Positions 6,207 to 63,238 of a stretch of DNA of 64,000 bases are shown one piece after another (position 1 is the stretch's first letter; every line of letters starts with the position of its first letter). The stretch lies in the IMG/VR virus record IMGVR_UViG_3300032245_001746, positions 255,858-319,857 of that record; one strand, 5' to 3'. The translations under genes were made by a program, and so were the position numbers. The notes beneath the pieces were generated by a model. That model searched no databases and was not told the DNA's origin. It saw only the letters and a program-made list of their open reading frames with translations.

Positions 6207-6446
6207 TCAAACTGGAATGCTGTTGTACTCTTCAACGGCAAGTGAAAACGACGTGAATCGTTTTGGTTCCTCGTCATTGTGTTGCACCACATAATTGACG
6301 TGATCAAGTCGAGACTTATCGCAATAGTAGGGCTTCACAACAACAACCAGGGATTTTTTCCCAATTCCAGAAACCGCACAGGATGCGATTGTTGTTGAGA
6401 CTTCTTGATCCTTCGTGCTTTCCAGATCGATTTCGTGTTTTCTCAT
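6207..6446 (-). CDS. Hypothetical protein
   Basis: GGAG RBS; stop inside the repeat. Confidence 0.8.
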   Translation of the reverse strand: MRKHEIDLESTKDQEVSTTIASCAVSGIGKKSLVVVVKPYYCDKSRLDHVNYVVQHNDEEPKRFTSFSLAVEEYNSIPV

Positions 6447-6503
6447 TGTTTTCTCCAAGTTTGTGGCTGACAACGAGATATTGTACAATCAAACTTGATG
6501 GTT

Positions 6504-6686
6504 CTACTTGGAAAAATAGAACCCAAACAAGCACACAACCGCAATTCCAAATGAAATGATCATTGCAGATCGAATCAGGAAAATCATTCCTTCGCCGCCA
6601 AAATGATTTGGGTTGGTTTCTTTATGCATTTTGACAGCGAGAGCCATCAAAAACAAGTTAAAGATGAAAATGAAGACGTAGATCAC
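6504..6686 (-). CDS. Small two-TM membrane protein
   Basis: AGGAG RBS, GTG start. Confidence 0.75.
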   Translation of the reverse strand: MIYVFIFIFNLFLMALAVKMHKETNPNHFGGEGMIFLIRSAMIISFGIAVVCLFGFYFSK

Positions 6687-6756
6687 TTGTTTTCTCCTGT
6701 TGTTTGTTTCTCGTATCGTTGTATTGTACAATCAAACTTGTTGATTTGTGAATAAA

Positions 6757-6787
6757 AAAACGGGGATAATTTAATTATCCCCGTTTT
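6757..6787 (-). terminator. Intrinsic terminator
   Basis: AAAACGGGGATAAT/ATTATCCCCGTTTT stem with U-tract. Confidence 0.85.
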
Positions 6788-6869
6788 ACAACACGACTAC
6801 GTATGGAACATTTATGTCAGCTTAAAGCTGCGTTTTGTTTTTGGGTCCAATCGAGTCGGGTGTTGTATC
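6787..6869 (-). ncRNA. Candidate small structured RNA, copy A
   Basis: ORF-free promoter-to-terminator unit, near-identical to 10359-10441, ends base-pair. Confidence 0.65.
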
Positions 6870-6890
6870 GTTGAATTGTACAATCAAACT

Positions 6891-7148
6891 TCAATCGATT
6901 TTGAATTCTGATCCGTCTGGAAGTTCAACTTTTGTGACATTTGGAATAAGTCCTTGTTCGCGACTGTCAAACAGTGCGGAACGCAGATCTTGTTCGTTTG
7001 GATTTGGCCAATGAATTGAGTTTGCTCCCTCAGTATGAGAGATCAAAATACAAACTCCATCGTCTTCGTAATGAGCCTTCATCAATTCGTCGACGATATC
7101 GTCTTCAGAAGTGTAAAGTGTTCCGTCGATTGCAATTAATCGCACCAT
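6891..7148 (-). CDS. Acidic hypothetical protein
   Basis: AAGGA RBS. Confidence 0.8.
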   Translation of the reverse strand: MVRLIAIDGTLYTSEDDIVDELMKAHYEDDGVCILISHTEGANSIHWPNPNEQDLRSALFDSREQGLIPNVTKVELPDGSEFKID

Positions 7149-7204
7149 TGATCGTTTCCTTTGAGGTTGACGTGTTTTGTATCAATGGATTGTACAATCA
7201 AACT

Positions 7205-7402
7205 TCAGTCAACAATCCAGACAATTTTGCCAGTGCCTTTAACAAAAGCAACCTCTTTGCCATCCTGTTTCACACATACGGGGCATCCGTCCATGCTATT
7301 TTCGGCGGTTCGAAGTCCGTCCTGAACGCATTTTTCAACAGCTTTACGATCAGGCAGATTATTCGTTGGATGTGTGGTTCCGTTGTAATGCACTGAATAC
7401 AT
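7205..7402 (-). CDS. Hypothetical protein
   Basis: Start trimmed to MYSVH. Confidence 0.75.
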   Translation of the reverse strand: MYSVHYNGTTHPTNNLPDRKAVEKCVQDGLRTAENSMDGCPVCVKQDGKEVAFVKGTGKIVWIVD

Positions 7403-7459
7403 TGCGTTTTCCCCTGGATTACCTGTGATTGTTCTGAGAGGGGATTGTACAATCAAACT

Positions 7460-7783
7460 TCAATCCCAACTTACAAGGTCCCAGCGAACCTCACCTGTAT
7501 CTCGCAGGATTTCGAGCATTTGAATTGCTTGCAATGGAGTGGCTTGTTCTACTTTTCCACACATGTATCCATTAAATTCTGGATAAACGACACGTTCAGA
7601 TTGTCTTACAGGCACACCCGTGAAGTCGGCAAACAAATCAGGACTTATGAAATGTTCGTATTGCGGTTTGCAGACGGTTCGAATATGTCCAGCAATACAA
7701 CGTTCAAGACTCCACATGTCAAATGAGTCTTCATTAACATTCTTCAAAATGTCAATGGCTTTTTGCACATTTGGATAGATCAT
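7460..7783 (-). CDS. Hypothetical protein
   Basis: Start trimmed to MIYPNV. Confidence 0.8.
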   Translation of the reverse strand: MIYPNVQKAIDILKNVNEDSFDMWSLERCIAGHIRTVCKPQYEHFISPDLFADFTGVPVRQSERVVYPEFNGYMCGKVEQATPLQAIQMLEILRDTGEVRWDLVSWD

Positions 7784-7861
7784 TTGCTCATTCCGTTTTG
7801 TTTGGGGCTGATATCGATATCGGTTCATTGTACAATCAAAATTCATTGATTAAGTACAAGA

Positions 7862-7899
7862 GAAAACGGCAAAGATGGCGTACATCCCTACCGTTTTTC
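7862..7899 (-). terminator. Intrinsic terminator
   Basis: AAAACGG...CCGTTTT imperfect stem. Confidence 0.65.
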
Positions 7900-7922
7900 A
7901 GTTCTAAAGTTTGGGAGCTTGA

Positions 7923-7994
7923 TCAAACTGAAGAACGATTTCGATTTCGAATTTTTCGCAGGACGATTCCTGTCAGCAGGAACAATGAAATCAT
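7923..7994 (-). CDS. 23-aa hydrophobic/basic peptide MISLFLLTGIVLRKIRNRNRSSV
   Basis: GGAG RBS, own promoter at 8033; below ORF-track cutoff. Confidence 0.55.
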   Translation of the reverse strand: MISLFLLTGIVLRKIRNRNRSSV

Positions 7995-8065
7995 TTGTTT
8001 ACTCCGTTCGGGTGAAGGGCTGATACGGTTACATTGTACAATCAAACTTAATTAATTAAGTATAA

Positions 8066-8104
8066 GAAAAAACGAATGAGGTTCTTACTCTCATTCGTTT
8101 TTTC
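8066..8104 (-). terminator. Intrinsic terminator
   Basis: GAAAAAACGAATGAG/CTCATTCGTTTTTTC. Confidence 0.85.
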
Positions 8105-8266
8105 TTTTTTTCATAGAGGAGACTATGCGGCGTAGATTAGTCTCTCAGCACTCTTATTTCCCTGCAACATTTGGGTTGACCATCACCAAAATTAGGTCTT
8201 GTTGTTTAAGTACAACAAGCAAAACTAATTATTTTGTAGTACATCAACTCATTGTACAATCAAACT

Positions 8267-8458
8267 TCAACCGCCAATACTCCAATGAGATGGCTTTGTT
8301 GGTTTTTGAATGGTCACATATCGTCTTCCATCAACAATTCTGATGGTTTTGACACTTCCATCTGGCAATCTCACCGTTCCAGATCCATTCGAACAACGAG
8401 TTTGTGTGTCATGTCTGTCATGTGTGTCGTAATAGCCACCATATAGGTTTTTGCTCAT
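8267..8458 (-). CDS. Hypothetical protein
   Basis: AAGGA RBS. Confidence 0.75.
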   Translation of the reverse strand: MSKNLYGGYYDTHDRHDTQTRCSNGSGTVRLPDGSVKTIRIVDGRRYVTIQKPTKPSHWSIGG

Positions 8459-8517
8459 GTTTGTTTCCTTCTGACATCGTCATATTGTACAATCAAACTT
8501 CATTGATTAAGTATAAG

Positions 8518-8547
8518 AAAAAACAGGAATGTTTCATTCCTGTTTTT
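8518..8547 (-). terminator. Intrinsic terminator
   Basis: AAAAACAGGAATG/CATTCCTGTTTTT. Confidence 0.85.
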
Positions 8548-8652
8548 AGCGATTTTTGGATAAAATTAGTGTTTTACTCGTTACTTATACAGTAGTATAT
8601 ACTAACGTGGTATACCTTTGTATAAGAACATCGCCAAACGCTCTACACTAAT
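8548..8652 (-). ncRNA. Candidate pseudoknotted RNA motif, copy 1 of 3
   Basis: Conserved with 24954-25039 and 25529-25606, with covarying stems. Confidence 0.7.
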
Positions 8653-8696
8653 CCAGCTTTATCAATACCCTAAAGCTGGAAATCGGGATAAATTAG

Positions 8697-8769
8697 TGGT
8701 GCCGGTGGGAATCGAACCCACGACCATCGGATTAAAAGTCCGGTGCTCTACCAACTGAGCTACGACACC
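8697..8769 (-). tRNA. tRNA-Lys(UUU), no encoded CCA
   Basis: GGTGTCG/CGGCACC acceptor, CTTTTAA anticodon loop, GTTCGATTC T-loop. Confidence 0.95.
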
Positions 8770-8795
8770 AATACTGTCAGATTGTACAATCAAAC

Positions 8796-9035
8796 TTACC
8801 AGCCGTAATCGGATGGATCGAAACAAGACATGTCTGGATCTGTATCTAGTTCCAGATCTAAATCCTCATCCAGATATTCATCCAAATAGCTGTCATTACA
8901 GCAACCACATGGACAATACTGATCATATTCCAGATAGGAAAAATACAGATCTTCCAATTCGAGTTCTTCACGAACTTGTTCTTCTCTTTCGAGACGTTGT
9001 TCTTCGTTGAATTTTGCTACCAGGTTTTTTGACAT
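8796..9035 (-). CDS. Very acidic small protein with CPCGCC motif
   Basis: AGGAG RBS; about 25 D/E in 79 aa. Confidence 0.8.
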   Translation of the reverse strand: MSKNLVAKFNEEQRLEREEQVREELELEDLYFSYLEYDQYCPCGCCNDSYLDEYLDEDLDLELDTDPDMSCFDPSDYGW

Positions 9036-9069
9036 TGTTGTTCTCCTGAAGCAGGATTGTACAATCAAA

Positions 9070-9363
9070 CTAAATCATAGCAGCATTTCGAGCCGCACAT
9101 TTTCGTGCATAGTGCAATGATGGAGAATCACGTTTCAGTACAATTAAACCCTTTTTCTGAGTTTCATACATCCAGGTAACGCAGATTGCCTGGTTGACTT
9201 CTCCATTCTGATTTTCAATTTCCACTTCAGTTTCGCCAACAGGAATTTCTTCCTGTTCTTTCATGGTGGGAATGTCGTATCCCATGAAATCATTGGCTAA
9301 CGCATGGAAATAAATCCATGATACTGTGTTTTTTGGAAACGCATCGTAATGAAACAATCGCAT
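9070..9363 (-). CDS. Hypothetical protein
   Basis: TAG stop overlaps the repeat. Confidence 0.8.
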   Translation of the reverse strand: MRLFHYDAFPKNTVSWIYFHALANDFMGYDIPTMKEQEEIPVGETEVEIENQNGEVNQAICVTWMYETQKKGLIVLKRDSPSLHYARKCAARNAAMI

Positions 9364-9376
9364 TTGATTTGATCCT

Positions 9377-9440
9377 ATAGGTGGATATTACAGCAAGGTG
9401 TTTCACCTTTGTGTCTTATTTTGCTGTAATATCCACCTAT
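9377..9440. repeat. Perfect 20-bp inverted repeat in a 5' leader
   Basis: ATAGGTGGATATTACAGCAA / TTGCTGTAATATCCACCTAT, 24-nt loop. Confidence 0.9.
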
Positions 9441-9460
9441 CATCAGATTGTACAATCAAA

Positions 9461-9772
9461 CTAAGTGGTATCCCAATTTTCTTTCCAGAAAAGTGGCCAG
9501 GATTCTTCTGAATACCACGCTTCCCCCCACGATGGAGAGTCGTTTTCGTTGACTTCTTTCACTTTATCAGGATATTTTTCACATGCCTGATCAAATGAAA
9601 TTGATGTTTCATAAACGGCATCGTGCCATTTCATGGTTTGATGATCGATTTTGTTTCCAGGCAGAACCTTAGAACCGTTCGGAAAATAATATCCTCCCGG
9701 CTTGACTTCTGTCATTGCATCAGTCAATTCCTTTTCAGGATAACTACCTTGAGGCACAAGCAGAATTTTCAT
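9461..9772 (-). CDS. Hypothetical protein
   Basis: AAGGA RBS; stop overlaps the repeat. Confidence 0.8.
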   Translation of the reverse strand: MKILLVPQGSYPEKELTDAMTEVKPGGYYFPNGSKVLPGNKIDHQTMKWHDAVYETSISFDQACEKYPDKVKEVNENDSPSWGEAWYSEESWPLFWKENWDTT

Positions 9773-9818
9773 TGTGTATTCCTTGTGAAGTGATAAATCT
9801 CAATTGTACAATCAAACT

Positions 9819-9983
9819 TCATCGATCGGACTGATCTGGACCGTTTCCATATGGACCAACATATTTTGTTGATTCTGGTTTAGAAACGGGATCTGTCAAA
9901 GCTACACCGTTGCCGTATGGACCAACGTAATCAGATTTTTTCTTTTCGTCAACCTGAACGTCGATTTTAATTGTGATTGTCAT
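9819..9983 (-). CDS. Small protein with duplicated YVGPYGNG octapeptide
   Basis: Start trimmed to MTITIK. Confidence 0.7.
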   Translation of the reverse strand: MTITIKIDVQVDEKKKSDYVGPYGNGVALTDPVSKPESTKYVGPYGNGPDQSDR

Positions 9984-10048
9984 GATTGTTCTCTTTGAGA
10001 TTGTGATATCACTACATTGTACAATCAAACTTCATTGATTAAGTACGA

Positions 10049-10084
10049 CAAAAAATGCATGGATTTATTTCCATGCATTTTTTG
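10049..10084 (-). terminator. Intrinsic terminator
   Basis: CAAAAAATGCATGGA/TCCATGCATTTTTTG. Confidence 0.85.
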
Positions 10085-10326
10085 TTTTTCAATATAGGAG
10101 AAGAAATCAGATTTCAGGGGGAGCACGATTATTAATCATGGATGTGTCCAATATTGGATCGGGCTGCGGCGAATATTAGAGATGAAAAGAAAGAAATTTA
10201 TGTTTTAGGTCATGTCCTCATGGTAGTTTCTCCTTGACTAGTGGTTTTTGTTTTAGTTAAGTTTAACTTTTCTAACGTTCGTTGCATCGCAACATTGTAC
10301 AATCAAACTTCATTGATTAAGTACAT

Positions 10327-10359
10327 AAAAAAACAGAGATAAATTAATATCTCTGTTTT
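10327..10359 (-). terminator. Intrinsic terminator
   Basis: AAAACAGAGAT/ATCTCTGTTTT. Confidence 0.85.
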
Positions 10360-10441
10360 ACAACACGACTACGTATGGAACATTTATGTCAGCTTATTTG
10401 CTGGTATTGTTTTTGGGTCCAATCGAGTCGGGTGTTGTATC
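10359..10441 (-). ncRNA. Candidate small structured RNA, copy B
   Basis: Duplicate of 6787-6869 with its own promoter and terminator. Confidence 0.65.
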
Positions 10442-10461
10442 AATGGATTGTACAATCAAAC

Positions 10462-10638
10462 TCACTTCGTGAAGCTCAAAAGTGAAGCTACAAATCCAAC
10501 AAAACACCACAAAATCAACCAAATATGAGCCAATTTGATTGAAATTGGCAGTTTTTCTTTTTCTACCCAATGACCAATTGAGATGAAAATCACGAGAGAA
10601 GTCACCAACATTGCAAAAATAGCTTGGAATGTTGTCAT
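10462..10638 (-). CDS. Small two-TM membrane protein
   Basis: AAGGA RBS, MTTFQ start. Confidence 0.75.
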   Translation of the reverse strand: MTTFQAIFAMLVTSLVIFISIGHWVEKEKLPISIKLAHIWLILWCFVGFVASLLSFTK

Positions 10639-10713
10639 GTTTGTTTCCTTGTTTGATTTTTGATTCACTTCGATATCGGTTCATTGTACAATCAAACTTT
10701 TTATTGTTTTAAC

Positions 10714-10744
10714 AAAAAAAACAGGGATATTTCTATCCCTGTTT
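10714..10744 (-). terminator. Intrinsic terminator
   Basis: AAACAGGGATA/TATCCCTGTTT. Confidence 0.85.
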
Positions 10745-10769
10745 AATCGATTCTCTGAGATTTCTCAGA

Positions 10770-11180
10770 TTATGCAGCTTCTGCCGTTGTCGTCGGTTCC
10801 AGAACAACAGTTTCGACGGTTTCTTCTGCCGTTTCCGTTGTTTCGAGGACAACAGTTTCAGTTTCTTCGTCCGTTGGCAGTTCGACGTTCAGGTGTTCGC
10901 AGATCAGTTCGAGCATATCTGCGTTCTTGTCCGTCTTCGCGTCAACAATCGTGTCGATCAGAGAGGTAACAATTGTTCCCTTGAGGAACTGGAGAAGATA
11001 GTAACAGGCGAGTTCTGCGTCAGAACCCTGTTCCAGTGTCGCCATGAACTTGGCAAATACTTTTGCCATTGTCTTGTCGATTGTGCCGCCCTGTGAGTTC
11101 TTATTCTTAGAACCCTTCGGGCGTCCACGTCCACGCTTAGGAGCTTCGACGTTTACAGTTGTTTCGGCTGAATTTCCCAC
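10770..11180 (-). CDS. AT-hook protein with acidic C-terminal tail
   Basis: PKRGRGRPKGSKNKNS motif; E/T-rich tail. Confidence 0.8.
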   Translation of the reverse strand: MGNSAETTVNVEAPKRGRGRPKGSKNKNSQGGTIDKTMAKVFAKFMATLEQGSDAELACYYLLQFLKGTIVTSLIDTIVDAKTDKNADMLELICEHLNVELPTDEETETVVLETTETAEETVETVVLEPTTTAEAA

Positions 11181-25320: not shown

Positions 25321-25445
25321 GAAGTTGAACAATTAACTAATTACCTAATAAAAGTGGCACAATTCTAATTAAATAAGTTGTACTAGGCAGATATTTTGTA
25401 CCTATTAGGTAATCCACCCTGATAATTAGTTAGTTGCTCAAACTC
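25321..25445 (-). ncRNA. Candidate rod-shaped small RNA
   Basis: ORF-free unit between two repeats; long irregular hairpin. Confidence 0.5.
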
Positions 25446-25491
25446 ACAATTCTCGTATTGTACAATCAAACTTCATTAGAAGTAAATAAAT

Positions 25492-41071: not shown

Positions 41072-41090
41072 TTTTAATATTCCTAAAAAG

Positions 41091-41163
41091 TGGTGCGGGT
41101 GGGAATTGAACCCACGACCAATAGATTAAAAGTCTAGTGCTCTACCAACTGAGCTACCACACC
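41091..41163 (-). tRNA. tRNA-Lys(UUU), second copy, no CCA
   Basis: GGTGTGG/CCGCACC acceptor, CTTTTAA loop. Confidence 0.95.
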
Positions 41164-61682: not shown

Positions 61683-61710
61683 AATTACTTTCTAAATCAA
61701 GTTAATGAAG

Positions 61711-61783
61711 TGGTGCCGGTGGGAATCGAACCCACGACCATTGGATTAAAAGTCCAGTGCTCTACCAACTGAGCTACAACACC
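61711..61783 (-). tRNA. tRNA-Lys(UUU), third copy, no CCA
   Basis: GGTGTTG/CGGCACC acceptor, CTTTTAA loop. Confidence 0.95.
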
Positions 61784-62703: not shown

Positions 62704-63203
62704 TAAATTGACCACCAATCTTTATGAAGAAAATCAACATTGTTTTTTGAATACAACATTTCCCATTCTGGACTTGTTTCTGCATCATCATACAAATATT
62801 TGATTTTTGCTTTCAATCCACGATGTTTATTTGCGTGCGACCTGAAATATTGATCTTTATCTTTCATTTCCAGTAGTAATTTAACATATGGATTATTCAT
62901 CCCATAATTCTTGGAAATTTCATCAAGTGCTTTTTTAGCTGCAATTTTAATTGCAATATGAGTATTTGACACTCTTTCTTCAGGAGTTATTCGCACCAAT
63001 ACTGGATTAATTTGATATTCATAATATTTGTTTTCCAATGGCATCAAGCTTTCGAAATATACAGCGAATAAATCATTGCAAAAATGTTCTTGTTGTGGTT
63101 TATGATTCACTTTAATTTCAGATGGTTGATGTTTTTTGTTGTAAAAGTGATTAATTAATGCAACAGAAATTAATAGTGCAAAAACAGAAAGTGCTACCAA
63201 CAT
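62703..63203 (-). CDS. Membrane-anchored hypothetical protein
   Basis: N-terminal TM. Confidence 0.75.
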   Translation of the reverse strand: MLVALSVFALLISVALINHFYNKKHQPSEIKVNHKPQQEHFCNDLFAVYFESLMPLENKYYEYQINPVLVRITPEERVSNTHIAIKIAAKKALDEISKNYGMNNPYVKLLLEMKDKDQYFRSHANKHRGLKAKIKYLYDDAETSPEWEMLYSKNNVDFLHKDWWSI

Positions 63204-63238
63204 AAAATTTCCTTTAATAAATTTGTTTCAAAATAATA

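What the first reader, a model, noticed from the sequence alone, without database searches (positions are those of the whole stretch)
6787..10441. Duplicated 83-nt ORF-free transcription unit: candidate phage sRNA
Seen: 6787-6869 and 10359-10441 are nearly identical, yet flanked by different terminators and each starts 6 nt after its own TACAAT. The ends pair (UACAACAC..CGACU with AGUCG.GUGUUGUA). The only divergent patch changes the loop and flank of an internal CAGC/GCUG hairpin while keeping the stem. Inference: a functional small RNA moved as a cassette, possibly a decoy for a host RNA-binding or defence protein.
Basis: partly seen in the sequence, partly recalled or inferred. Interest (0 to 1): 0.7.

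Follow-up and report, generated by a model that had tools for sequence, protein, structure and literature searches.

The report
Paired candidate small RNAs, jumbo phage
A large freshwater/wastewater phage carries two near-identical, protein-free mini-genes (promoter, about 85 nt of hairpin-forming RNA, terminator) that are kept as a pair in related phages, so they probably make small RNAs, but expression is unproven and the function is unknown.

Summary
Window 6787-6869 and 10359-10441 are the only two copies of an 83-nt sequence in a 320-kb jumbo-phage record. They are identical at 73/73 positions outside one 10-nt patch.

The element must be read on the minus strand. Each copy follows a full copy of the phage's 17-nt promoter motif (AAGTTTGATTGTACAAT, 73 copies, one orientation). 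Each ends at a strong intrinsic terminator with 7 U. The primary transcript would be about 120 nt.

The core folds into a rod (8+6+4 bp) with a CA-rich internal loop and a small apical hairpin (z -4.0/-4.5). No plausible ORF, tRNA or Rfam family fits.

Related phage contigs from several metagenomes keep the same A and B variants in the same order, while neighbouring gene cassettes come and go. All variation lies in predicted unpaired positions or the apical loop.

The evidence has limits:
- No stem position varies, so there is no covariation test.
- No discrete transcript could be shown.
- Promoters here occur about every 260 nt, so having one is not special.
- Conservation against relatives is not exceptional.
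- No target or partner was found.

Verdict: a credible new candidate phage small-RNA pair. The "decoy" idea is untested.

The parts
6875..6891 (-). Promoter motif of copy A (minus strand AAGTTTGATTGTACAAT; -10-like TACAAT at 6880-6875)
   Evidence: One of 73 same-orientation copies of the motif. The stop codon of the upstream 85-aa ORF (6891-7148) abuts it.
6787..6869 (-). Copy A core: rod-shaped RNA with an 8-bp closing stem, CC bulge, 6-bp stem with a U bulge, 2x2 loop, 4-bp stem, CA-rich internal loop, and apical hairpin CAGC-UUUAA-GCUG
   Evidence: Repeat. Fold z -4.0. Covariance-model score 118.3 bits.
6750..6786 (-). Intrinsic terminator of copy A (14-pair stem, then 7 U)
   Evidence: Terminator scan. 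Fold of core plus terminator z -7.0.
6825..6834 (-). Divergent patch in copy A (apical loop and 5' flank of the hairpin on the RNA strand)
   Evidence: Alignments. Exactly these positions switch to the B form in a river metagenome.
10447..10463 (-). Promoter motif of copy B
   Evidence: The stop codon of the upstream 58-aa membrane-protein ORF (10462-10638) overlaps it.
10359..10441 (-). Copy B core: same rod, apical hairpin CAGC-AAAUAA-GCUG
   Evidence: z -4.5; 109 bits.
10322..10358 (-). Intrinsic terminator of copy B (12-pair stem, then 7 U). Homologous to A's, with two compensated stem changes.
10397..10406 (-). Divergent patch in copy B

Best explanation
The two copies are paralogous genes for a small non-coding RNA of a jumbo phage, transcribed from the minus strand.

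Proposed mechanism:
1. Each gene is a self-contained unit. The phage's standard 17-nt promoter fires about 6 nt upstream of the core.
2. The nascent RNA folds into a stable rod. Its 5' and 3' ends pair for about 12 bp.
3. A strong intrinsic terminator releases a transcript of about 120 nt.
4. There is no terminator between the upstream gene and the element's promoter, so the same sequence also forms the 3' end of read-through mRNAs.

The rod exposes an invariant CA-rich internal loop (CCCAAAAACAA...) and an apical hairpin. The hairpin loop is the only part allowed to differ between the two paralogs.

My best guess (inferred, not shown) is that the RNA acts in trans during infection by binding a partner through these exposed parts. 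The partner would be a host or phage RNA or an RNA-binding protein, and the A and B loops would give two specificities.

Shown: the anatomy, the duplication, the predicted stability, and retention of the A/B pair in relatives. Inferred: expression, strand of action, and trans action.
For: - Architecture: a full promoter motif lies only on the minus strand. Minus-strand terminators with 7 U are called by the tool.
- Strand: in relatives the terminator stem carries a G.U pair that is valid only in the minus-strand RNA.
- Stability: z -4.0/-4.5 for the core, -7.0/-6.4 with the terminator. The CA-rich loop is predicted unpaired in both variants.
- Non-coding: no ORF with a ribosome-binding site, and no gene was called there in 11 related contigs. 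It is not a tRNA or tmRNA.
- Paralog conservation: 73/73 identical outside the patch, although the terminators and leaders diverged.
- Age of the pair: the same A and B variants occur in the same order in a phage whose aligned flanks are 93% identical on average, in a binned MAG contig and in a river metagenome. The duplication therefore predates that divergence, yet the cores stayed identical. Meanwhile neighbouring cassettes were gained or lost.
- Position of changes: every change seen falls in a predicted unpaired position. These are the apical loop (L059), a bulged U (the B copy in L038/L071-74) and the A/B patch, which re-forms a 4-bp stem.
- Precedent: the same promoter also drives stand-alone tRNA genes here, so it does drive stable-RNA genes.
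Against: - No transcript evidence. The RNA libraries were available only as strandless contigs, with depth similar to the neighbours and possibly reflecting DNA.
- No covariation. All 18 rod pairs are invariant.
- Promoters occur about every 260 nt in this stretch and 14 of 73 follow a terminator, so being flanked by both is less special than it looks.
- Conservation against the relative is not exceptional: 22% of 83-nt windows are at least 82/83 identical.
- The promoter-proximal leaders are swapped between A and B in the relative. Recombination is active here and could homogenise the copies.
- On the plus strand, copy B's hairpin extends to 8 bp through G.U pairs and is followed by a T-rich run.
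- The element is confined to a narrow clade.
- No target or partner was found.
Confidence: 0.55

Rival explanations
1. Empty cassette or relic. The 83 nt is what remains of a gene cassette whose ORF was lost, trapped between a generic promoter module and a generic terminator module. It was duplicated by recombination between the many promoter repeats. It is transcribed or not, without function.
For: - The region is a mosaic of cassettes that are inserted and deleted at promoter/leader repeats.
- The first ~20 nt of the core resemble the leader of the neighbouring 85-aa gene (family D6).
- Other ORF-poor promoter units exist (8084-8250, 10062-10290, 25330-25460).
- Conservation against relatives is not exceptional.
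- The distribution is narrow.
Against: - Both paralogs are retained, in order, in a diverged relative while neighbours are lost.
- 73/73 identity between old paralogs outside one patch is unexpected for a neutral relic. At 7% or more divergence the chance is about 0.005 (my estimate), unless gene conversion spared only the patch.
- The fold is far more stable than shuffles.
- All changes avoid the stems.
Confidence: 0.2
2. Cis-acting RNA element rather than a trans-acting sRNA. The rod sits at the 3' end of read-through early transcripts, just before a terminator. It would serve as a 3' stabiliser or processing site (for example RNase III-type), or as a put-like element in the nascent RNA that changes how RNA polymerase treats the terminator behind it.
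For: - There is no terminator between the upstream ORF and the element, and the stop codons overlap the element's promoter, so upstream mRNAs must run through it.
- Both copies lie immediately upstream of a terminator.
- The rod has about 18 bp of interrupted helix.
Against: - About a dozen other terminator-bearing junctions in this region (14 of 73 promoters follow a T-run; other terminators in 6400-10800) do without such a rod.
- A dedicated full promoter sits 6 nt upstream of each copy.
- There is no alternative pairing between rod and terminator that is shared by A and B (inspection).
Confidence: 0.12
3. DNA-level or plus-strand element. It would be either a MITE-like unit bounded by its 12-bp inverted ends, or a safeguard terminator for antisense (plus-strand) transcription arising from the palindromic promoter core.
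For: - The ends are inverted repeats.
- The promoter core ATTGTACAAT is a palindrome.
- The internal hairpin plus T-run is flagged terminator-like on the plus strand, and B's hairpin is stronger on plus (-6.6 vs -5.2 kcal/mol).
Against: - Only two copies exist, both in the same promoter/terminator context.
- There are no target-site duplications (inspection).
- The long part of the promoter motif is never found on the plus strand (0 of 73).
- The plus-strand hairpins are weak (4-8 bp, with interrupted T-runs).
Confidence: 0.05
4. It encodes a tiny protein: on the plus strand 23 aa (A) / 36 aa (B) starting MEHLCQL, or on the minus strand a 12-codon UUG-initiated frame.
For: The patch preserves total length, so both frames stay open in A and B.
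Against: - No ribosome-binding site precedes either frame, although this phage's genes use clear AGGAG-type sites.
- The plus-strand frame runs antisense to every gene in the region, and its C-terminus reads into the promoter and differs between copies and relatives.
- The patch changes four consecutive residues in either frame.
- No gene caller predicted it.
Confidence: 0.03

Closest known systems
Candidate small RNAs of virulent and jumbo phages found by transcriptomics (e.g. the 75-nt sRNA predicted for phiKZ, PMC8244752; ONT-cappable-seq surveys of Pseudomonas phages, PMC10914365, PMC11512511)
   Same: A short ORF-free unit with its own phage promoter and intrinsic terminator, inside a region of small early-type genes. 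Function unknown.
   Different: There is no sequence or Rfam relationship. Here there is no transcript evidence at all. The unit exists as two conserved paralogs that differ only in an apical loop.
RNA anti-CRISPRs (Racrs; solitary repeat units), PMC10651486
   Same: A small, promoter-driven, non-coding, hairpin-containing RNA in a phage genome.
   Different: Racrs are defined by mimicry of a host CRISPR repeat. No host or repeat is known here, so this could not be compared. The element is about 85 nt and rod-shaped, not a unit of repeat length.
Bacterial and phage Y RNAs (Ro/Rsr-binding; own knowledge)
   Same: About 100 nt, with the 5' and 3' ends paired into a long bulged stem and a large internal loop. 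Often found near tRNA genes.
   Different: No Rfam Y-RNA-type match appears even at E up to 10. No TROVE (Ro) or RtcB gene is present in the 320-kb record, although the record is only about 63% complete.
Hfq-type sRNAs and 3'-UTR sRNAs with an internal promoter (DapZ/MicL type; own knowledge)
   Same: An intrinsic terminator with a long U-tail, an unpaired A-rich (AAN)n stretch, and a location at the 3' end of an upstream mRNA with its own promoter.
   Different: The host and its chaperones are unknown. No target was detected within the phage.
Phage HK022 put RNA (own knowledge)
   Same: A structured RNA of about 70 nt, encoded directly downstream of a promoter and upstream of a terminator.
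   Different: put consists of two adjacent stem-loops and acts in cis on RNA polymerase. Here there is a single rod, and nothing indicates read-through.

Membership tests
Any curated Rfam family (4227 models) | Covariance-model score at or above the family's gathering threshold | tested here: not met
   No match over the element at gathering thresholds, nor at E up to 10 with permissive filters. The best overlapping hit was L20_leader at 23.5 bits against a cut-off of 58.7.
tRNA / tmRNA | Cloverleaf detected by ARAGORN or Rfam RF00005 | tested here: not met
   Not detected at default or 80% thresholds. Only inconsistent calls appear at a 60% threshold, with different 'anticodons' in A and B. 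No significant similarity to the phage's 20 tRNAs or its tmRNA.
Autonomous bacterial-type sRNA gene | Own promoter directly upstream | tested here: met
   A full 17-nt phage promoter motif ends 6 nt before each core. The motif's promoter activity is inferred from its position before genes and tRNAs, not measured.
Autonomous bacterial-type sRNA gene | Intrinsic terminator at the 3' end | tested here: met
   (14- and 12-pair stems followed by 7 U).
Autonomous bacterial-type sRNA gene | Discrete transcript of the predicted size | not testable with these tools
   Only strandless assembled contigs of metatranscriptomes were available.
Structured functional RNA | Base pairs supported by compensatory changes in homologs | tested here: inconclusive
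   18 of 18 rod pairs never vary. The hairpin re-forms in a shifted register in B, but that is a single event.
RNA anti-CRISPR (Racr) | Sequence and structure mimicry of a host CRISPR repeat | not testable with these tools
   The host is unknown. The only bacterial-genome hit is a phage contig binned in a MAG.
Y RNA / Ro system | Ro (TROVE) protein encoded nearby or in the genome, and a Y-RNA-like model match | tested here: not met
   No TROVE or RtcB and no Rfam match. The record is incomplete and a host Ro cannot be excluded.
MITE-like mobile element | Terminal inverted repeats plus target-site duplications and dispersed copies | tested here: not met
   Inverted ends are present. No flanking direct repeats were found, and there are only two copies, both in the same context.
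Small protein gene | ORF with a ribosome-binding site, conserved as protein | tested here: not met

The most novel reading that the evidence does not exclude
The two rods are an RNA-based counter-defence pair. Early in infection the phage would flood the cell with two stable decoy RNAs that share one protein-binding scaffold but present alternative apical loops. Each would titrate a different variant of a host RNA-binding or RNA-guided immune or regulatory factor (for example a CRISPR-repeat-binding, anticodon-nuclease or chaperone protein). This would be a new class of RNA anti-defence element in jumbo phages.
Probability: 0.1. Interest if true: 0.75.

Novelty: new member of a known kind. Interest (0 to 1): 0.4.

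Why it matters
Small RNAs of virulent phages are poorly catalogued, and almost none has a known function. This is a cleanly delimited, duplicated candidate with two natural loop variants kept side by side in several environmental phage lineages. That gives a ready-made experiment: delete A, B or both, or swap the loops. If it proves to be a sponge or decoy, it would add to the very short list of RNA-based phage counter-measures. If it is inert, it documents how promoter/terminator cassettes in jumbo-phage early regions generate sRNA-like units by recombination. That would be a useful caution for sequence-only sRNA prediction.

Tried and rejected
- Rfam at gathering and permissive thresholds: nothing.
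- ARAGORN at relaxed thresholds: no credible tRNA-like fold.
- Exact 20-mers of the element in IMG/VR: none. BLAST 'distant' against 50,697 phage records: none.
- Covariance model R1 on the own genome and seven related or candidate viral records (G001-G007), including two distant relatives (DnaE 37-43% identity): only the two known copies. The weak hits (G001:44747, G006:43005, window 63154-63232) were inspected or scored as AT-rich noise.
- Scan of the promoter-sharing 102-kb relative for short ORF-free promoter-terminator units: none. Its promoters are sparse and drive tRNAs and ordinary genes.
- Targets within the phage: the longest complement is 14 nt, inside the phage smpB coding region. 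This occurs in 23% of dinucleotide shuffles. A duplex scan against 343 translation-initiation regions was no better than shuffles.
- Partner genes: no TROVE or RtcB. Ten neighbouring proteins gave no informative Pfam or PHROG match: only sub-threshold Pfam hits for the 58-aa protein and a weak unknown-function PHROG for the 136-aa protein.
- Host inference from the MAG holding a related contig: all 49 promoter motifs lie on that one contig, so the bin gives no host clue.
- Conservation as a signal: checked and found unexceptional against the relative.
- More B-type copies through the upstream gene: four further contigs, all identical to the known one.
- A resemblance I recalled between the CA-rich loop and the 3' end of a type II CRISPR repeat was not pursued. 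It rests on memory and on about 12 nt.
- B's loop region is 14/15 complementary to the anticodon arm of the phage tRNA-Ser(GCU) (E 0.026 in a database of about 2 kb). I regard this as chance.


Full report
**Context.** The window is the last 64 kb of a 319,857-bp IMG/VR virus record, estimated 63% complete. GC is 28% for the genome and 31.5% for the window. The genome encodes a DnaE-type polymerase, a gyrase B carrying an intein, and a P2-I-type tail protein. It also has 20 tRNAs, a tmRNA and an SmpB. It is therefore a low-GC jumbo myovirus-like phage, and its host is unknown. Near-identical pieces occur in wastewater, activated-sludge, river and freshwater metagenomes.

**The region.** Nearly all genes in the window lie on the minus strand and are small; only two ORFs exceed 300 aa. 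A 17-nt motif, read on the minus strand as AAGTTTGATTGTACAAT, occurs 73 times between window 5516 and 61806. It is always in that orientation and occurs nowhere else in the genome. It has no -35-like partner, and in 26 of 73 cases GAT follows 6-8 nt after TACAAT. It precedes protein genes with AGGAG-type ribosome-binding sites, and it precedes stand-alone tRNA genes. I take it to be this phage's promoter for this gene block; that is an inference from position. The same motif occurs in a more distant 102-kb relative, again before tRNAs and genes. Between about 5.5 and 17 kb there is one promoter roughly every 260 nt, and 14 of the 73 sit just after a T-run or terminator.

**The observation.**
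- The two 83-nt stretches are real and are the only copies in the genome. They agree at 73 of 73 positions outside a 10-column patch.
- On the minus strand each is preceded by the promoter motif (6875-6891, 10447-10463) and followed by an intrinsic terminator with seven U.
- The two terminators are homologous but differ by two compensated G:C to A:U changes, a loop change and an indel.
- The core folds into a rod: an 8-bp closing helix, a CC bulge, 6 bp with a bulged U, a 2x2 loop, 4 bp, then a 15/10-nt internal loop rich in C and A, capped by a 4-5-bp hairpin. The z-scores are -4.0 and -4.5. The CA-rich strand is predicted unpaired in both variants.
- The patch changes the apical loop (UUUAA to AAAUAA) and the 5' flank. 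The CAGC/GCUG stem re-forms one position over.
- I estimate that a random replacement would keep a 4-bp stem only about 2-8% of the time. This is suggestive, but it is a single event.

**Strand.**
- For minus: the long half of the promoter motif is never on the plus strand. The U-tract is 7 on minus against 4 on plus. In relatives the terminator stem reads CAGGGAUA/UAUCUCUG, whose G.U pair would be an A.C mismatch on the plus strand.
- For plus: copy B's hairpin extends to 8 bp through G.U pairs and is followed by a T-rich run.
- On balance the minus strand is much better supported.

**Coding potential.** No frame has a ribosome-binding site. The plus-strand frame (23/36 aa) is antisense to everything nearby and reads into the promoter, with a variable C-terminus. 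A 12-codon UUG frame on minus changes four consecutive residues between A and B. Gene callers on 11 related contigs from ENA, NCBI and JGI left the gap empty.

**Relatives.**
- A pattern that left the hairpin free found two metagenome contigs and one MAG contig. Look-ups through the neighbouring small proteins found nine more loci.
- The 31.5-kb contig (L038/L055) and the MAG contig each carry one A-type and one B-type copy, in the same order as the window and 4,180 bp apart. A river run holds both variants.
- That relative is on average 93% identical over 9 kb of aligned sequence, with cassettes gained and lost. For example, the 85-aa gene 6891-7148 is absent there, which puts copy A directly behind the 65-aa gene. 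The same joint is seen in two RNA libraries.
- All A cores are identical except one loop change (UUUAA to UUAAA in L059). All B cores from the other lineage carry one U to C change at the predicted bulge.
- The A/B split is therefore older than these lineages, yet the paralogs stayed identical outside the patch. I take this as moderate evidence for selection on the sequence.
- Three caveats apply. First, 22% of 83-nt windows are at least 82/83 identical between the two phages, so cross-genome conservation is not exceptional. Second, the short leaders between promoter and core are swapped between A and B in the relative, so recombination is active right at the element. Third, no stem position varies, so the pair-count test is silent.
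- More distant relatives lack the element.

**Expression.** Four wastewater metatranscriptomes contain the element, but only as assembled contigs without strand. Their depth is similar to that of neighbouring genes, and DNA carry-over cannot be excluded. No statement about a discrete transcript is possible.

**Function.**
- No Rfam family matches, and the element is neither tRNA-like nor tmRNA-like.
- No Ro or RtcB is encoded, and the neighbouring proteins are uninformative.
- No complementarity to phage transcripts exceeds chance.
- The upstream ORF's stop codon overlaps the element's promoter in both copies, so read-through mRNAs also end in this rod plus terminator.

I commit to a pair of trans-acting small RNA genes as the most likely reading (0.55 that it is a real expressed non-coding RNA gene). 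The exposed CA-rich loop and the variable apical loop would be the working surfaces, and the partner is unknown. The rivals are a functionless relic cassette (0.2), a cis-acting 3'-end or termination-modifying element (0.12), a DNA-level or plus-strand element (0.05) and a micro-protein (0.03).

**Novelty and score.** Phage-encoded small RNAs with their own promoter and terminator are a known kind, so this is a new, unclassified member. The conserved two-variant pairing is its most interesting trait. Interest is 0.4.

Noticed in passing
window 5516-61806 (minus strand): There are 73 copies of a 17-nt promoter-like motif, AAGTTTGATTGTACAAT, all in one orientation and none elsewhere in the 320-kb genome. 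It has no -35 element and its core ATTGTACAAT is palindromic. The same motif occurs 11 times in a distant 102-kb relative and 49 times on one MAG contig. This degree of invariance suggests a phage-specific transcription factor or polymerase rather than plain host sigma-70.
   Followed up: partly
window 8696-8769, 41090-41163, 61710-61783: Three separate tRNA-Lys(UUU) genes, each behind its own promoter motif, plus tRNA-Leu(UAA) x2, Arg(UCU) and Met in the same block. Multiple Lys(UUU) copies recall phage tRNAs that counter anticodon nucleases.
   Followed up: no
genome G000:C1:29678-30043 and about 96430-96860 (outside the window): The phage encodes its own tmRNA (tag GETVRLAA) and an SmpB-like protein.
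   Followed up: partly
window 9377-9440: A perfect 20-bp inverted repeat (24-nt loop) in the 5' leader between promoter 9447 and the 97-aa gene 9070-9363. It scores as miRNA-precursor-like in Rfam at sub-threshold level.
   Followed up: no
window 8084-8250; 10062-10290; 25330-25460: Other promoter-driven units without a convincing ORF. The first is about 165 nt with two hairpins and a terminator. The second has a ribosome-binding site, ATG and only three codons before a stop, and relatives show indels there (a possibly broken small gene). These may be further non-coding RNAs or decayed cassettes.
   Followed up: partly
window 6863-7176 versus L038 and runs X5/X13: The 85-aa gene cassette (6891-7148) with its promoter is present in the window and in L037 but absent in L038 and in two wastewater RNA libraries. 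The breakpoints lie in the repeated promoter/leader sequence. This is a direct example of cassette gain or loss by recombination at promoter repeats.
   Followed up: yes
window 10770-11180: A 136-aa protein with an AT-hook-like RGRGRPKGSKN motif and an internal 45-nt tandem duplication (10778-10859) near its acidic, Thr/Glu-rich C-terminus. It lies two promoter units upstream of copy B, separated from it by the 58-aa membrane-protein gene (10462-10638).
   Followed up: no
genome G000:C1:24232-27498 (outside the window): Gyrase B gene interrupted by an intein with a LAGLIDADG domain.
   Followed up: no
window 10390-10406 versus phage tRNA-Ser(GCU) at G000:C1:82881-82971: Copy B's hairpin region is 14/15 complementary to positions 23-37 (anticodon arm) of the phage tRNA-Ser(GCU). 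E is 0.026 in a very small database, so this is probably chance.
   Followed up: partly
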